Assembly: GCA_020536535.1 (NCBI GenBank)
Contig: JAHLWZ010000370.1
Location: 1-38,334 of the forward strand
DNA length: 38,334 nucleotides
DNA from: Pelomyxa schiedti
Taxonomy: Eukaryota; Protista; Evosea
Direction of reading: 5' to 3'
Part shown: positions 1,968-10,900 of the stretch, in pieces
Layout of the letters: every line of letters begins with the position of its first letter
Position numbering within the stretch: the stretch's first letter is position 1
Program-made: the position numbers and the translations under genes
The notes under the pieces: model-generated
The model's database searches: none
What the model was told of the DNA's origin: nothing
The model's input: the letters and a program-made list of their open reading frames with translations, nothing else

Positions 1968-3152
1968 TTAAAAGAGAAGCAAGCTTCCAAAAAGTACGAG
2001 GACAAAGATCACACATGCCCATAGGAACCTGTCCATGTACGGGTGGGATTTGCGCTCAACAAGGCAAGCCAGAGGCACAACGCCATCAAGAACTATCCAG
2101 AGCAACAATGCCCAAAGCCATAACATCAGTGATACAAGCATTGGCCGCACCCTTGGCCAGGCCCACACAAAGAATCGGCGAGCAGTATCAGCAAGGAAAT
2201 GAGACGAGAGTGCTGCTGTGAATACTGTGGCATTCCACACTGCTTCCAATGCTCTATCATTGCCACCGGTTTGTGCTAGGTAGATACTTTCGTCGGGTAC
2301 ATGGTCATACTGAACGGCCAGCTGCGTGATTGGAGGTTCTGCATTTCTGAGCGCAATGGAATCAGCCAGCAAAGCCCCGTGAATCTCCTCCGGGTCAAGG
2401 ACTCCCCTCTCGGCAGTTACGTCGGCGTCGGCGTAGGCGTAGGTTTTGTCATCGTCATCGAAGCCGGCGTTGTAGGCATTGTCATAGCCGGCATCCTCGG
2501 CGTCTCCAGCGTTGGCGTAACCATCGGCGTAGGCGTAGGCATCCACTGCTCCCTCGGGATCCCCGCTGTTGTGGGCATAGTAGCCTGCACCGAAAGCGAG
2601 GCTGCGATGCAGTGCCACGGCAGCCTCATTAGCCTCGTGTTCCTGCCGCAGAAGCAGCGACTCGTCATCACCTTGGGCTGGTGCGGCAGTTGCAACGGGC
2701 GATGTAGTGGTAGCGGAAGCCGCGGGTGTGCCGAGATCGCGAGCGTGATAGGGAGCCGAGGGAATGGCAGCCGTCGGCGGGGTGCGATTTGGCGATGGTT
2801 CCCTGTTTCTCGGCGGCTGGTGCACCGCGCGCGAGTGGGACAAAAGCGCCTTCTCAGAGCCGAACTGCTCGCCGCAGGTGAAACAGGTGTACAGCGATCG
2901 ATTGCGTTCGACGGCGATCGAGTTTGGGGTCGTGCTCGCGGCGTTTGTAGCTGGCGATGCGGAAACGGAAGCGGAGGCAGCAGCGGTTGTGCCCGCAGCG
3001 GGTGACTGGTTTGCGGCCGCACCGATACGCGCGCGATCTAGGAAGGCATTGACTAGCTGGCTCTGCGCCTCGTATTCTTTGGAAAATGTGCGAAGAGATT
3101 TGCCTGGAAGTAGATCTACAGAGAGGGAGGTAGTGTCGACACTTGAAGTCAT
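1968..3152 (-). CDS. Hypothetical protein with one C2H2 zinc finger, Ala/Thr/Pro-rich and acidic regions, and about two C-terminal transmembrane helices
   Basis: 394-aa open ORF. YTCFTCGEQFGSEKALLSHSRAVH fits C-x2-C-x12-H-x4-H. Hydrophobic segments MLVSLMLWLWALLLWIVLDGVV and FLWACVIFVLVLFGSLLLF lie at the C-terminus. Confidence 0.7.
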   Translation of the reverse strand: MTSSVDTTSLSVDLLPGKSLRTFSKEYEAQSQLVNAFLDRARIGAAANQSPAAGTTAAASASVSASPATNAASTTPNSIAVERNRSLYTCFTCGEQFGSEKALLSHSRAVHQPPRNREPSPNRTPPTAAIPSAPYHARDLGTPAASATTTSPVATAAPAQGDDESLLLRQEHEANEAAVALHRSLAFGAGYYAHNSGDPEGAVDAYAYADGYANAGDAEDAGYDNAYNAGFDDDDKTYAYADADVTAERGVLDPEEIHGALLADSIALRNAEPPITQLAVQYDHVPDESIYLAQTGGNDRALEAVWNATVFTAALSSHFLADTARRFFVWAWPRVRPMLVSLMLWLWALLLWIVLDGVVPLACLVERKSHPYMDRFLWACVIFVLVLFGSLLLF

Positions 3153-3393: not shown

Positions 3394-5547
3394 TCAAAAA
3401 ATATCGGGTTCAATTGGGGCAGGGGGAGGGCGCGACTGTACAGTTGGGAAGTCGGGCCTGGATTCTAGCCACTGCATGACTCTGTTGGTGCCCCACCATT
3501 CGTCCGGGTAGCCTGGTACATTCATCCCGAGTGTACAACAGCAGCACGCACCAACAATCACACCACCGCGGGTGTGTGTGTCAGCGTGGCCTCTGAGGCT
3601 GTTGGTGGCGGGTGCCGGAATTTTGGGTTGCGGATGTTGTTGCCGAGGGAGTGCTTGCAGTACAAGGTTGTAGACGCATTCCACATCGACCATCTGTGGT
3701 TCACTAAGAGCGGTGGGGAGACACCACCGGTGGTTGTGCTCATCCTTGGGTGTTTGTGGCACCACTGAAGGGTGGCGGGTATTGTTCAGCAGTAGTATAG
3801 GGTGGTCAGGTGTGATCTCAAGTACTGTCTCAGTTTCTGCCTCTGCGGTCAATTTGCCGTTAATAACAATCATTGGAATAGGGTGATGCACCGGGCATCT
3901 ATAGGTGTGAGATGATGTGGGAGGTGTGAGACACACTTCCAAATGCAATGAACAACAGCGGCTGCTAAGTCTCCCCCATCGTTATTAGGATAGAAAGCAA
4001 GAACTTGATCCCCAACTGCGAGGTCTTTCATCGGGCAGTATTTGTTATTTGATAGCAGGATGCTCGTATTTGGACCAAAGCATACAATATCGTCTGAACT
4101 GGACTGTGTAATATGAGAATATTAACTCATAGCTGATACATACACGCCGACGTCTGGGTGGAGGGGGAACATATTCGCGGAAACACTTTTCATGGTCCCA
4201 TGTAAACGAGGGGTTTTTCCAACTCAATCCTTTAACACAGCCAGGGTAATTCCAAACTCCACGAAACGCCGTTGTCCACATTGGCTCAGTCTTGGCAAGG
4301 TGGTAAAACAGCTTGCAAGTTCGAGAGACCCGAACCAGTGCAACAAAGTCAAGGTATTCCATCACCACTGTGTTGCTGTTGGAGCGAAAAGTTTTGGGTG
4401 GCACATACGGAGCCAAATGTCATTTGGGATGAGACCCAGTGAAGTTTGAATTGCAGTCGCAGGAGAGATTTCCGTAGTATGGGGAGGACTGTGAAAATGA
4501 GGATAAGAAAAGCAGTAGATAAGCACACTTTTTTGTGGGTTGTTCTAGTTGTTTTTGTGATCTTTTGGAAAAAAAACTGAAGAATCCTGGTTTTTTGGTA
4601 GATATAGGTTTCGTATCTCCAAACATTCCAGCTCTGCATACTTCCTCGAAGAGGAGGTCCAAACCAATATATTGCTTTGAGCTGAACGATTTCCGATTAA
4701 CGGAAAACAAAAAAGGACATAGTACCTGCATTGAAAGTAACCATACATCGAATTTCTTATTACTGCAGAAATGCCCTCTTGAAATGAAACAGTGGTCCCG
4801 GAAGGCGGCTGTGAGAAAAACGTTGGAAATGAGAACAAGTTACGATATGTAAGAAAATGCATACTGGAAGCTCATTGTCAATAAGGTCTAGTTTGAGACC
4901 GACAAGGATCACAACCCCCTAACAAGTCCCGTGAAAGAAAAAATAATGAAACATGAAGCATACGTGTGATATTTTCCGAATTTCAGAGAGACATCTATTC
5001 AGAGCCTCATCGAATGTACCTCGGTCATTAAGAGAGAAGCATAAGAGGACCACGTTTGATCTCGTAATACTGGTCGAGGGGCACATTGGGGGAAAAATTT
5101 TTCATAATGAATATTTTGCATACTACTGTTGTCGCACTGACACGAATTCATCCTGTCCCATTCTTTTTCCGAAGTTAAAGAAATGCAACCAGGTACCTCT
5201 TACTCACGTATCTAGAAGATCCAGTGTCACGTAAACAGTGTCCACAACCAGCATTTTACTGTACTAGTTCATTGGACAAAACAAAATCGGAACTTGCTTG
5301 AAACATACAGAAGGTTCCAAAGAACCTTCGTCAGGGTACGGCCACCATCGGCCACTGACGTAGCTGCATTTCGAGAGCAAAAGCCACATTAGTGCAGTTG
5401 CACATAAAGAAGGTTGCGGCTGCGCGTGGAAAAAAGCTCCCTAGTAAGATCTGCCAGAGCCAACACCACATACGATTCTACGAGCGCCGTTTTTCCCACA
5501 CAACTGGGTCCGTACACGAGCACCGTTCCTACCTTGCGTGCCGTCAT
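3394..5547 (-). CDS. Ras/Rho-like small GTPase + F-box + Vint-type Hint (hedgehog/intein) domain fusion, multi-exon
   Basis: One continuous frame through canonical GT-AG introns. GTPase: G1 GPSCVGKT, G3 LDTMGQDEF, NVVLLCFSL, G4 LVGLKLD, G5 YFQCSSKQYIGLDLLFEEVCRA. F-box: LGLIPNDIWLLVMEYLDFVALVRVSRTCKLFYHLA. Hint: CFGPNTSILLSNNKYCPMKDLAVGDQVLA...ITPDHPI...WCLP...VYNLVL...CTLG...WWG. Confidence 0.82.
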
Positions 5548-5718: not shown

Positions 5719-7681
5719 TCAGGCGTACTTGGCACTGAGGTTTGTGTAGATGTGATGGAACCTCCTGAGCCTGGTGCCGGTCGTGGGGCTGGATTCCGTG
5801 ATGTAGATGTTGCCTGCCTTGTCCATGGCGAGTGCCTGAGGTGCGTCGAGCAGCGCTGCCCGTGGGTCTCTCGAGTCATCGTGGCCTCTCTTCCCGTAGC
5901 AACCAACGAACGGCGCAACATTACCTATTAATGGCGGTGGGAGTGAGATATATGGGCTTGAAATAGAGAGGACTGTGGGGGTGTGGGGGGAGGGGAGGAG
6001 ACAAACCGTCATGGTCCATTCTCCATACACAGTGGTTGGATGAATCAGAGAAGAATGCATTTCCTATACGATCAAGAATGATCCCACAGGGCCAGCCCAG
6101 CACAACCGGCGCCCAGAACTCTCCAACAGGGTCCCATTGTGAAAGAGATATCTCGGAGACAACAGCGGCGCCGGAGTTTTGAGGGGTAATTCTGAAGAGG
6201 CACTTACTCTTTGTTGCTGTGACCAAGAAAGTTCTATTTTTGGCAACGCAAAGATCCTCCCAGTCACTCTTCATTGATGTACTTGCAATCTCAGAAATCA
6301 AAGCCCCTGTGAGGGTTAAGTCTAGGGCTCTTGGTGAAATGTGAAGTGATACCATCTAGAGTATAGCAATTGAGCGTATCTCCGGCTAGACCATCACATA
6401 TAACATTCAAGAACCCTTCTGAATCGATTGTAATTCCCCGGGGGTTGGTACACAGTGTAATATTGGTTTTTCCTTCGCTTTATAAGTTTGAACGAAATCT
6501 CGGCCGACGATACCTGCTGGTGTGACTTTGGATATCACTTGAGCACAAGTGATATAGAGGTTATCATTTTCATCAAGAACGATGCGTCTAGCACATTCGA
6601 CCTCACAGACGGGTGTAATTTGATCTTGAGAATAGTCACTAATCCGTCAAAATGGAATTGAGGGAATACATTCTGTAATTTTGAATACATGAGACAGATA
6701 GAGGCAGAAAATGTGTTCTGAAACTTCTTCTTTAGTTTTTTTCCCTATGGCAACACCACAAGCCCCACAATATCCCCCTTTATAAATTGTGGTGACACGT
6801 CCTGTACAGATTTTTAATAGGAGTAAGAGAATCAGGTGCCAACCATAGCAAGCAATATATAGCCCAATCACTTTACCAATGCAGAACGGAACGGGATTGC
6901 GTGACAGAATGCTGTTGGCGCCACACCGACTGTGCCACAAACACAAGAATGTCACTGCCTGCCTTACAGTCATTTCGTCACTTTCAGAGCCTTTGCTCGT
7001 CACACCAAGGGCAGAGCTCCACGGCCTCTGGAGAGTAATCCTAGGGTCCACCAACTTGGGACGCTCGACAGAGTTAATCACAGGTGGAGGCCTCGCAGGA
7101 GGAACAGGTGGAGGAGCTGCTGGATGCGGCAAGGCGGGAAACCCTGGGTCAGCCATCCTAGCCAGCATGTTTGTTGAAAACGCCCTCAGAGACTGGTGGA
7201 CATAGAAATTGTCAACAACCCCGGCGTCGCCCATGTCGAGCCGGGAGTGGAACTTGTGGGTGAGTGCAGTCATGAACCTGAAGATGCTCCAAAAACCCCC
7301 GGTCGGGGGCAGCGCCTCGGGAAGTTCCGAGCTTGAGTGGATTGCTTCCATGTAGGAATGGCAGTAGGCTCCAATGAGGAGTATGACCTCTTTTTGCAGC
7401 AGGCACTTTGCCAGAGCCGTCGCCATGGGGATTATGGGAGCGCCCATCCCCTGCGCCTCAGACACGACCGGAACCGAGATAAGTATCGGCAGCACTTGCT
7501 CCTCGATTATTTGGCGCTCCCTGTCAGTTTCTGCTGCGGGAGGGGCAAAATCTAGCTGGAACGGCGGCGGGTGGCCGATTGTGGGAGGGGTGCCAAAAAT
7601 GTTCGGGGGCAGGGGCAGGTTGGCATTGAAGTTGTCGTCGTGGTTTCGGGGGAAGTTAAAGGGATTGAAGTCGTCCGCCAT
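5719..7681 (-). CDS. NHL-repeat beta-propeller protein with a Pro-rich N-terminus, multi-exon
   Basis: C-terminal NHL-like repeats WPCGIILDRIGNAFFSDSSNHCVWRMD and PQALAMDKAGNIYITES. Long first exon (ORF 6647-7681). Internal exon boundaries are only partly checked. Confidence 0.7.
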
Positions 7682-7949: not shown

Positions 7950-10900
7950 ATGCAGGAAAGCCAAGGTACCGGAACAGCGACACCGTCGCCCACCCCCACG
8001 CCCTCGGAACAAGGACAAGACAAGGACCAGGGCCACGAGATCTCCGCTGCTGCCGCCAATAACAACGACAAGCAAAACGACGAGGGATCTACAGCCGCTA
8101 CCATTACGCCAATCTCCATCGCCGTGAGCTACAATGAGAGCGACTCCAGCGACAGCGGCGACGACGGCAGGAACACCAGCGCTGGCGGCGGCGCTGCGGG
8201 AGGCGCCGTGGCCACCCACGAGGAGGAGGAAGCGGGAGGCGACGGCAACGACGAGGGGGGCAAAGGTGATGATGACGGCGACGAGAAGGAGAGGAAGGAC
8301 GGGCAAGGGGAGGACCCCTCGTCCTCGTCGTCGAGCGACGGAGACGCCGGCGACGACGAGAGGAACAACGCGGCGGGAGAGGGGGCAGGCACAACGGGGG
8401 CGTACCCAATGACTTCGTTCTTCAGCACCTCCACGGCCACAGCGACCACCTCGCAGGCCAGCAGGGCGCACTCTTATGTGGCTTACCTGGCTGCCAAGAC
8501 GGGCATCCCTTCACTGATCAGTCAGGTTTCGGCTATTGAGGAGCAGCAGCAGGAGGAGGAAGAGCGCAACAAGCAGCAGGCTGCGCAGTCTACTGCCTTT
8601 GTTCTTGTTAAGGAGGAGAAGCCACGGAGACCTGTGGCTGTTCAAAATCAGAGACTGGCCGCCATCTTGGATGAAGAGTTGCCAGAAGTAAGTGAGGTGG
8701 GTGCTCTGCCAACTGTAGCAACGTCTCCACCCATTCGACAACCCAAGGAGGCCCCTTCCGTCATTGATTCTATTACTGCTGCAGTGGTACATTCGTTTCC
8801 TGTATTTCGTTAATATTAAAACTTGTACTAGGAGGAGCGTTCTACAAAACCCAGCAAGGTGTTTTGTGAGGAATGTGAAGACCAAGAAGCTACAGTGTTA
8901 TGTTCACAAGTAAGTCCAGTTGTACGGTTTTTTTTAAAGTTTCACATCCTTCTCAGTGCCATGATAAGTATTGCAACTTGTGCTTTTTTGCACAACATCG
9001 AAAGGGTAGTCGCTCATCACACATTGCGACCAACCTCGATGGTTCCCCAATTTCAACATCCCATACCACAACAGTTGAAAGTATGAGACCTTCTGCGACA
9101 GCCACTCCCAGTGCCGCTTCTACAACCCCAGACAGTGATGATGACAGTAACAGCAATACTAATGCTGCTTCCAGTGACGATGACGCACCTCCTTTGCGGA
9201 GGATGTTTTGGAGTTACTATGACTCCTACTACAGATCCAAGCCACGAGCTTTCAAGCCACCTCCAGATTCTGCCAAGAACATGAGAAGCAAGGAATCTGA
9301 AACTGTTGCAGAGCGTGCTAGATATATTCCATTACGTCTTACACTGGTAGGAACGAACCACATGATTTGGTGTAACATCTACCAGGAAGAAAGAAAACTT
9401 CTTCGCCTTCTTGAGGCTGTGTTGAATGCCAGTAAGTATACAGATAGAGTTGACGCAGTTTTTAAGTCACCAGCGGCCCGTATGCAGCAACAAGTATAGA
9501 TACCCTTCACAGTGAACCTTGAAGTGAAAACCAAAATAGGTAAAAAATATATGCTCTCTACTCTCAGGAATTCTTTCTGCATGGGATAATAAAGCTGGGC
9601 AGGTTTTGATGTAACCACCATGAGACATATCATCTCACCACATGGCAGGAACTTCTTGAGGATAGGGATTTTGCAAAATACGAAAAATTTTTCCAACAAG
9701 TATTTGAAATAGGCCGAAGACATAAAATTATGAACCCAGGTTAGTGAAGCTTCCCTCGTGGTACCATGTAATGAACAACAGAAAAAATGAGAACACAGTA
9801 CGCCATGATGGTGTATCTTCTTCAGGACAGCTGCTCAGTACAAATCCGAGTATTATTTTCCTTCTTGGTTTATGGTTTAATAAGAGGAAAGGAACTCCTT
9901 GGCTTCTCTCTTGTAAAGAAAATAACTACAGTGTACAGCTACCTAGAAGAACGCGGCGCCTTGGTAGCTCTTTTTTTGGGCTTAGTGATAACTAAAAAAC
10001 GCTCCTTAGGGTGCTCTGACCGACGACTTCATTGTGTGTGCCACTAGTGAAGTTGTACAAGCACCAGTAGGAATTTCCCTCTTTTTTGCTGGTTAGTAAT
10101 TTGGGATTTGCAGGAAAAATCACGTTATGATATTCAACGAGAAATTAAAATCAAAGAGCGGGCAATTGAGCATATAGGTAATAAATACGCGAACGCAAAC
10201 GTGAATGCCGAGCAAATTAAAGTCTGCTTGTACTCAGTTTGTGATAACAACAGGTTTGATACATCCCAAGAAATAACTTCTTACCATGTAACAGCTTCTT
10301 GAGATCCAATCGCGATCCTATTGATAAAATGATAGACTACTTAAAAACCATGTTTGCAGGAATGGACAATGATCCTTTGTGCTCATTGGCCATCTATGGT
10401 ATACCATCAATCCAAACCGTTCTAACTGTTGAAGGTGGTCAGGATGGATCACGATTAACACACACGCATGAGAGGCAATATCTTTATGTTCTGCAGTCGC
10501 TTACTCTATGGCGTGAGATTCAGCATAATATGTTCAAATTGTGGATCCTTGCCGAAGAAGATATGCTGAAGTGCGTTGAGGCTTTTAAGTTTTTGAATTG
10601 ACATCCCCAGACCCGGAAATGCATATGAACTCCGTAACACTGGGCAAGGACTTAACAGGGTGCAAAGTTCCCCTCAGATTTACCGTGTCATGCACACAAT
10701 TCTCCACACCACACAGCGCACAGTGGGTACGTGGGTAGGCTCGTCCGTGGTTCATCTTGGTACCTTTCTTTCTTGCTGTGGACTTGGCTTGAATATTCAT
10801 TTCCCTTAGGGGACCACAATGTACCAAATGCACTGAATTTCATTGATAAGTATACACAAGTGCCAAGAATTCTCAACCCAATTGTGCTCACACTCTCTCA

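What the first reader, a model, noticed from the sequence alone, without database searches (positions are those of the whole stretch)
3394..5547. Small GTPase + F-box + Vint-type Hint domain in one protein: candidate self-cleaving SCF ubiquitin-ligase adaptor
Seen: manual splicing through canonical GT-AG introns gives one frame encoding three modules. These are a Ras/Rho-like GTPase (about 4620-5547; GPSCVGKT, DTMGQ, LKLD, CSS), an F-box (about 4270-4445) and a Hint domain starting at the Cys codon 4080-4082 (CFGPNTSILLSNNKYCPMKDLAVGDQVL; block B ITPDHP; block F VYNLVL; tail CTLG...WWG). The ORF track misses the fusion. Known: Hint domains need the N-terminal Cys and the TxxH motif for the N-S acyl shift, and both are intact here. 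The TLG...aromatic-G tail with no His-Asn splice end resembles Vint domains (Pfam Vint, normally fused to VWA), not splicing inteins. GTPase-cullin adaptor fusions are known for BTB (RhoBTB, Cul3) and SOCS box (Rab40, Cul5). Inference: a Cul1/Skp1 adaptor gated by a GTPase that autocleaves at ...DDIV/CF. Cleavage could attach a nucleophile to the new C-terminus, as cholesterol is in Hedgehog. The protein has no CAAX box, and a basic RRRR patch lies just upstream of the cleavage site. I know of no described protein with this architecture.
Basis: partly seen in the sequence, partly recalled or inferred. Interest (0 to 1): 0.92.

Follow-up and report, generated by a model that had tools for sequence, protein, structure and literature searches.

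The report
Amoeba GTPase–F-box–Vint self-cleaving protein
This real 12-exon gene of the anaerobic amoeba Pelomyxa schiedti joins a small GTPase, an F-box (the hook onto a ubiquitin ligase) and a hedgehog/intein-type self-cutting domain; it is one of about 20 such genes in that genome, a combination I found in no paper, and it offers a way to test what Vint domains do.

Summary
Observation confirmed. Twelve exons (5547-3394, minus strand, 11 GT-AG introns) give a stop-free 531-aa GTPase + F-box + Hint frame. The gene is GenBank's 'hypothetical' Pelo_4551, whose model shares 10 exons. About 16 paralogues keep the exon order; four more add a Kelch propeller. Intron-less contigs of three paralogues join F-box to Hint. 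All three modules show dN/dS 0.07-0.41. The Hint folds like the Tetrahymena Vint (8R2C, Z 20.9), keeps Cys1 and TxxH, and lacks the His-Asn splice end and the C-terminal histidines of canonical Vints. A Thr sits where Hedgehog has its branch-forming Cys143. Best reading: an SCF adaptor whose Hint forms a thioester at Val315/Cys316 and releases the GTPase-F-box part, slowly or on a trigger (0.55). GTP gating is not supported, since switch motifs decay across paralogues. The GTPase descends from Rac by intron positions, yet its switch half now looks Ras/Rap-like. The scan reported this family before, on eight other loci of this genome. New variant of a known kind.

The parts
3394..5547 (-). Whole gene, 12 exons, 531-aa product (GenBank Pelo_4551, KAH3763583.1, Pelomyxa schiedti)
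5124..5547 (-). Exons 1-4: GTPase switch half (G1 GPSCVGKT 5511-5488; switch I EGSLEPSY; G3 DTMGQ); ranks Ras/Rap first in PDB
4620..5069 (-). Exons 5-8 (part): GTPase C-terminal half (G4 GLKLD 4900-4886; G5 CSS); ranks Rho/Rac first in PDB (family profile)
4552..4596 (-). Basic-aromatic motif KKPGFFSFFSKRSQK, conserved in the family; candidate membrane-binding helix in place of prenylation (inference)
4270..4433 (-). F-box (aa 226-266), split by a phase-1 intron conserved in all paralogues mapped
4144..4269 (-). Conserved post-F-box segment (W..YPG, WKNPSFTWD) and Pro/Arg linker ending RRRR
4080..4082 (-). Cys316 = Hint Cys1, preceded by Val315; predicted scissile bond
3799..3816 (-). Block B ITPDHP (Thr and His that assist the N-S acyl shift)
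3658..3675 (-). Block F VYNLVL (Asn at F:4; no His at the canonical Vint position downstream)
3526..3540 (-). End of Hint core CCTLG; Thr486 (3534-3532) at the position of the intein terminal Asn and of Hedgehog Cys143
   Evidence: (end registers)
3394..3525 (-). Vint-specific tail (PG..D.WWG, helix, PDFP), lacking the two His of canonical Vints; stop at 3396-3394

Best explanation
The gene encodes a substrate adaptor of an SCF (Skp1-Cul1) ubiquitin ligase made as a precursor with a C-terminal autoprocessing domain. Shown: one conserved reading frame, three domains, Hint fold, intact Cys1/Thr/His, purifying selection. Inferred: (1) the F-box binds Skp1; (2) the Rac-derived G domain binds nucleotide but works as a static, RhoBTB-like binding module and, with the KKxGFFSFFSK helix, places the adaptor at membranes; (3) the Hint makes a thioester at Val315/Cys316; it cannot splice or cut at its own C-end (no His-Asn), so the thioester is resolved, perhaps through Thr486, by water, a thiol or a nucleophile chosen by the Vint tail; (4) this releases a 35.7-kDa GTPase-F-box fragment and a 23.9-kDa Vint. 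The conserved Val at -1 suggests the reaction is slow or needs a trigger. I put plain hydrolysis and adduct formation at about even odds within this reading.
For: Frame and exon conservation. Cys1 present at all 23 other loci where block A was read; TxxH at all loci where block B was read. dN/dS 0.07-0.10 on the Cys1 exon against the two nearest paralogues, 0.07-0.41 overall. Model pLDDT 84, Z 20.9 to Vint 8R2C and Z 11-12 to BILs, inteins and Hedgehog. The terminal position is Thr, Ser or Cys across Vints, Cys in 8R2C; Hedgehog C143 forms a branched intermediate (PMC12054796). F-box over cut-off; five Skp1 loci and several cullin loci. Type B BILs, which lack block G, cleave without splicing (PMC4031507).
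Against: No Vint has been shown to cleave in any paper I could reach. Val at -1 is beta-branched; such residues attenuate the Cne PRP8 intein (title of ref. 50 in PMC4031507), and outside relatives often have Pro there. The C-terminal His residues of canonical Vints are lost. One paralogue has Ala for the Thr (L030). The full-length model gives no domain contacts (pLDDT 55). No Skp1 binding or transcript for this gene was tested.
Confidence: 0.55

Rival explanations
1. Covalent capture: the thioester is attacked by an amine, thiol or hydroxyl of a target protein, which welds the GTPase-F-box part to that target and hands it to the SCF for ubiquitylation.
For: The Vint sits just C-terminal to the F-box, where F-box proteins normally carry the substrate-binding domain (own knowledge), while Kelch and GTPase are N-terminal here. 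Vints recur next to E3 modules: U-box-VWA-Vint (PMC2362128; row 1). Fast gene birth, loss and domain swapping in the family fit changing targets.
Against: No direct evidence. I know of no Hint domain shown to acylate a foreign protein in vivo. Closely related Hints in cryptophytes follow a domain with no detectable F-box.
Confidence: 0.13
2. The Vint does not cleave in vivo; it stays attached as the substrate-binding or ligand-sensing domain of the F-box protein, and Cys1/TxxH are kept for folding or redox sensing.
For: Val or Pro at -1; loss of the canonical Vint histidines; canonical F-box geometry; long variable loop insertions tolerated.
Against: Cys1, Thr and His of block B are invariant over 25 aligned sequences from amoebae, cryptophytes and metagenomes at 24% mean identity, which is what catalysis predicts.
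Confidence: 0.22
3. GTP-gated cleavage: the nucleotide state of the G domain switches the Hint on or off.
For: G1, G4, G5 are conserved family-wide; this copy keeps DxxGQ; one Kelch-class member has a fully canonical Rac.
Against: Switch I and G3 are degenerate in many paralogues; about 135 residues, much of it low-confidence linker, separate G domain and Hint; the same Hint occurs without any GTPase (P0004, P0018, P0019, cryptophytes).
Confidence: 0.07
4. Artefact or relic: separate genes, or a decaying expansion without function.
For: Some copies are broken or partial (C35 lacks blocks A and B; C255 has a stop). No reads for this gene.
Against: Introns between modules are 40-44 nt, leaving no room for a gene end and start; spliced contigs of three paralogues; dN/dS far below 1; same layout in two other organisms.
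Confidence: 0.03

Closest known systems
VWA-Vint proteins (Pfam PF14623 Vint, PF14624 Vwaint; Burglin 2008, PMC2362128; structure PDB 8R2C)
   Same: C-terminal Vint-type Hint with blocks A and B, C-x-T/C-L-G end and helical tail; cytosolic; some carry an N-terminal U-box E3 module.
   Different: No VWA or Vwaint; partner is GTPase + F-box; the C-terminal His residues are replaced; separate clade (100/99).
RhoBTB (Cul3) and Rab40 (Cul5) GTPase-cullin adaptors (own knowledge)
   Same: Atypical small GTPase fused to a cullin-ligase adaptor motif.
   Different: F-box (Skp1/Cul1) rather than BTB or SOCS box; ends in a Hint domain; no CAAX.
GmGIN1 of Glomus and AIG1-Hint proteins (PMC2362128, PMC7053062; row 10)
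   Same: Cytosolic GTPase followed by a Hint autoprocessing domain.
   Different: AIG1/GIMAP GTPase and a true Hog domain there; Rac-derived GTPase, F-box and Vint here.
Hedgehog Hog domain
   Same: Cys1 and block B, N-terminal acyl shift without splicing, a nucleophile at the C143 position, an extra C-terminal subdomain.
   Different: No signal peptide, no sterol-recognition region by sequence or fold, Val rather than Gly at -1, Thr rather than Cys143.
Tetrahymena BUBL BIL domains (PDB 6TMM, 6Y75)
   Same: Protist Hint domain tied to ubiquitin-system modules; second-best fold match (Z 12.3).
   Different: BIL2 has a terminal Asn (N143 in the entry title) and lies between ubiquitin-like units; this one is terminal and has no Asn.

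Membership tests
Vint-type Hint domain (PF14623) | Pfam score over the curated cut-off | tested here: met
   32.3 bits vs 27 on P0033
Vint-type Hint domain (PF14623) | Hint fold plus the Vint C-terminal extension | tested here: met
   Z 20.9, rmsd 2.9, 153 aligned to 8R2C over model 2-214; next entry Z 12.3
Vint-type Hint domain (PF14623) | Blocks A and B intact (Cys1, TxxH) | tested here: met
Vint-type Hint domain (PF14623) | C-terminal His residues seen in canonical Vints (T-L/W-G-H and H-x-Y/F-Y/W/F-G) | tested here: not met
   Replaced by TLGM and DEWWG; present in five canonical Vints of the same genome and in 8R2C
VWA-Vint gene family (Burglin 2008) | N-terminal VWA and Vwaint domains | tested here: not met
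   No VWA/Vwaint hit at E up to 5; canonical loci L013 and L019 do hit Vwaint
Splicing intein / type A BIL | Terminal His-Asn and +1 Cys/Ser/Thr | tested here: not met
   Cys-Thr then Leu at those positions by structural end register
Hedgehog/Hog | Sterol-recognition region and signal peptide | tested here: not met
   Hedgehog match stops at the Hint core, model 5-176; N-terminus is a G domain
Hint autoprocessing proteins | Cleavage at the bond before Cys1 | not testable with these tools
   needs biochemistry
F-box proteins (SCF adaptors) | F-box motif over Pfam cut-off | tested here: met
   PF12937 33.9 vs 24.3; PF00646 30.7 vs 20.5
F-box proteins (SCF adaptors) | Binds Skp1 | not testable with these tools
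   Skp1 and cullin genes exist in the genome; binding untested
Ras-superfamily small GTPase | G1, G3, G4, G5 motifs and fold | tested here: met
   PF00071 84.3 bits; G-domain topology at high pLDDT
Rho family (canonical Rac) | Rho-type switch I/II, Thr35, CAAX box | tested here: not met
   Switch half ranks Ras/Rap first; Ser for Thr35; C-terminus IEPDIF
Rho family (by descent) | Common ancestry with a Rac gene | tested here: inconclusive
   C-half ranks Rho/Rac; all four introns of the N-half are shared with the canonical Rac-Kelch paralogue; no GTPase tree with references was built

The most novel reading that the evidence does not exclude
A family of ubiquitin-ligase adaptors that use a Hint thioester (possibly passed through the Thr at the Hedgehog-C143 position) to attach themselves covalently to a target protein or membrane component and so bring the SCF ligase to it.
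Probability: 0.15. Interest if true: 0.9.

Novelty: new variant of a known kind. Interest (0 to 1): 0.6.

Why it matters
Vint domains are spread across protists, fungi and giant viruses and have a deposited structure, but I found no paper that tests their function. This family puts one behind an F-box and a GTPase, two modules with simple read-outs (Skp1 binding, localisation, fragment size), in about 20 natural variants, including one lacking the branch-point Thr. That makes the Vint question directly testable. If the domain cleaves or conjugates, it adds self-processing to the ways a cullin ligase adaptor can be matured or aimed. The limit is range: I found the GTPase-F-box-Vint layout only in Pelomyxa and one unidentified metagenome contig.

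Tried and rejected
Following the operators' note, the spliced model was searched exon by exon by reference; the joined 531-aa sequence was sent to no search or fold tool and was only built inside scripts to check frame, motif positions and fragment masses. Whole-protein work used GenBank's 506-aa P0033, which lacks 25 linker residues. Rejected: that the cryptophyte and other outside relatives also carry an F-box-like motif (hhalign probability under 1%; no Pfam hit). Rejected: RRRR as the family's membrane anchor (not conserved). The full-length structure model was uninformative outside the G domain. Ten paper searches found nothing on this architecture or on 8R2C; the library lacks most subscription journals. 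The homologue tools are length- and word-limited, so absence outside Pelomyxa is weak evidence.

Full report
1. The observation. Reading the minus strand in three frames and listing splice signals gave twelve exons between 5547 and 3394. Eleven GT-AG introns of 38-110 nt join them into 531 codons and a stop, with no internal stop, and each intron would shift the frame or carry a stop if kept. Single exons hit F-box-like, Vint and Hint in Pfam. The genome (52.4 Mb, 5337 contigs) is Pelomyxa schiedti: a protein on a 38,334-base contig, Pelo_4551 / KAH3763583.1, came back from a search with paralogues. That independent model contains ten of my twelve exons letter for letter and passes the Ras, F-box and Vint cut-offs. 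It differs only at exon 10/11, where it removes the WKNPSFTWD-to-RRRR block.

2. What I could not do. As the operators asked, the spliced model was searched exon by exon and the joined step was left out; whole-protein searches and folds used the GenBank protein P0033 or paralogues returned by tools. No contig looked human.

3. A gene family. The last exon has 30 matches in the genome. Exon-by-exon comparison shows the order GTPase, F-box, Hint at 13 other loci, and at two more cut by contig ends. Four loci have about 1.7 kb more between GTPase and F-box; in the two with GenBank proteins this is a Kelch propeller. Intron positions and phases are shared across the eight paralogues mapped, in both classes. 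Intron-less Logan contigs from SRR23919876/7 match three paralogous loci with the introns removed and run from F-box into Hint; I infer they are transcripts. None spans GTPase to Hint, so that junction rests on GenBank models, conserved phase and introns of only 40-44 nt. A Kelch-F-box-Vint ORF is in the transcriptome of Pelomyxa sp. JSP, and a Rac-Kelch-F-box-Vint gene lies on a 110-kb metagenome contig that is only about 76% identical in short patches. dN/dS against paralogues is 0.07-0.41 in all three modules and lowest on the Cys1 exon. Nearly every copy of this F-box exon is followed by the Hint. Broken and re-fused copies exist, as in a birth-and-death family. Earlier notes of this scan describe the same family at eight other loci; my tests agree with them.

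4. The Hint domain. A model from 25 sequences has pLDDT 84. Its best match is the Tetrahymena Vint crystal structure 8R2C (Foldseek E 4e-8; Z 20.9, rmsd 2.9 over 153 residues), well above BILs, inteins and Hedgehog (Z 11-12). Cys1, the block B Thr and His, and the Cys of C-x-T-L-G are invariant over the alignment; Cys1 is present at all 23 other loci where block A was read. By the end registers of the structural alignments, Cys316 equals intein residue 1, and Thr486 falls on the intein terminal Asn and on Drosophila Hedgehog residue 400, which is C143 (only first and last pairs are given, so this is a register inference). Hedgehog C143 forms a branched thioester (PMC12054796). That position is Thr here, Ser in one canonical Vint and Cys in 8R2C, with one Ala exception. 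There is no His-Asn end, so splicing and C-terminal cleavage are not expected (PMC4031507). The two tail histidines of canonical Vints, and the His that three of five carry after block F, are absent. The His-less Hints form their own clade (100/99) with a Pelomyxa branch (97/91) and a branch of cryptophyte and metagenome proteins (98/95); the latter have an unknown N-terminal domain with no detectable F-box. The residue before Cys1 is Val in all ten short-class proteins checked and often Pro outside, which argues against fast spontaneous cleavage.

5. The GTPase. G1, G4 and G5 are conserved across the family; switch I and G3 vary and are often degenerate. This copy keeps DxxGQ but has Ser-Cys at the Ras 12-13 positions and Ser for Thr35, changes that by general knowledge impair GAP-driven hydrolysis and switching. 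The two halves disagree: residues 5-79 rank Rap1/Ras first, as a profile and as the single sequence, and residues 80-175 rank Rho/Rac first as a profile. The control, the N-half of Kelch-class Pelo_14336, ranks Rac1 first. Because the Ras-like half keeps all four introns of the Rac-Kelch genes, descent from Rac with a shift to Ras-like switch residues is more likely than a graft from a Ras gene; this is not settled. There is no CAAX box. A basic-aromatic motif, KKxGFFSFFSK, follows the G domain in the family and is a better candidate membrane anchor than the RRRR patch.

6. How it probably works. The F-box passes the curated cut-offs, and the genome has five Skp1 loci and several cullin loci, so an SCF adaptor is the plain reading. 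The Hint has what is needed for the first acyl shift and nothing for the later splicing steps. I therefore favour an adaptor made as a precursor that forms a thioester at Val315/Cys316 and is released as a 35.7-kDa fragment, slowly or on a trigger (0.55), by hydrolysis or with an adduct. Rivals: the Vint stays on as a non-cleaving binding domain (0.22); covalent capture of a target protein, suggested by the Vint sitting where F-box proteins hold substrates (0.13); GTP-gated cleavage (0.07); artefact or relic (0.03). Steps shown are the gene, the domains, the fold, the catalytic residues and selection; Skp1 binding, cleavage, adduct and target are inferred.

7. Against what is known. Burglin (PMC2362128) defined Vint genes as VWA-Vwaint-Vint, four with a U-box, and noted GmGIN1, an AIG1-type GTPase fused to a Hog domain. 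RhoBTB and Rab40 are GTPase-cullin adaptors (own knowledge). So E3-Vint, GTPase-Hint and GTPase-adaptor pairings each have a precedent, but F-box-Vint and the three-part protein appear in none of ten paper searches, and GenBank calls the gene hypothetical. It is a member of the Vint domain family by score and fold, not of the VWA-Vint gene family, not an intein, not a Hog, and not a canonical Rho.

8. Verdict. Real, functional by selection, undescribed as far as I can search, narrow in range, mechanism untested. New variant of a known kind; interest 0.6.

Noticed in passing
window 4223-4099 (exon 10/11): GenBank's Pelo_4551 model adds a 70-nt intron and another acceptor here, dropping a block conserved in paralogues; probably a mis-prediction, though an alternative splice form is not excluded.
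   Followed up: partly
L028 (G000:C826), P0009: GenBank KAH3756351.1 cuts the Hint short and runs into a DUF4403 gene, although the genome holds the complete Hint tail: likely a false fusion.
   Followed up: partly
L059 / L043 (G000:C35): F-box exon runs straight into the Hint tail; blocks A and B are missing. A deletion derivative.
   Followed up: partly
L042, L058 (G000:C672), P0004: The family's Hint, nested among short-class copies (99/94 with P0003), is fused to an ankyrin-like repeat protein instead of GTPase-F-box; a second partial copy lies 5.5 kb away. Suggests a recent domain transfer.
   Followed up: partly
L044, L045, L057 (P0018, P0019) and P0016, P0017, P0020, P0025, P0027, P0041, P0042: His-less Vints behind an unknown domain of about 130 aa with no Pfam match, in Pelomyxa, Rhodomonas and metagenomes.
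   Followed up: partly
L021-L027: A further Vint-like group in this genome with LTxGHP and GLxLCTLGxDCG motifs, split by introns; N-terminal partners not examined.
   Followed up: no
L013-L020: Eight strong canonical Vint matches in the same genome; the two tested upstream carry Vwaint.
   Followed up: partly
L051 (C442), L055 (C2044): GTPase + F-box copies with no Hint match in the DNA fetched; one has an assembly gap, both are near contig ends.
   Followed up: partly
window 8900-9499 +: Exon of a DUF2009 (non-canonical E2) gene with a B-box-like stretch; another ubiquitin-system gene 3.4 kb upstream, probably coincidence.
   Followed up: no
window 5719-6355 - and 1968-3152 -: Neighbours: an NHL-like repeat gene ending 171 nt before the start codon and a C2H2 zinc-finger gene starting 241 nt after the stop; weak Pfam hits only.
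   Followed up: no
Not otherwise tested.
   Followed up: partly
PDB 8R2C: In two searches the alignment to 8R2C starts just after the Cys1 position, which hints that Cys1 was replaced in the crystal construct; not verified.
   Followed up: no
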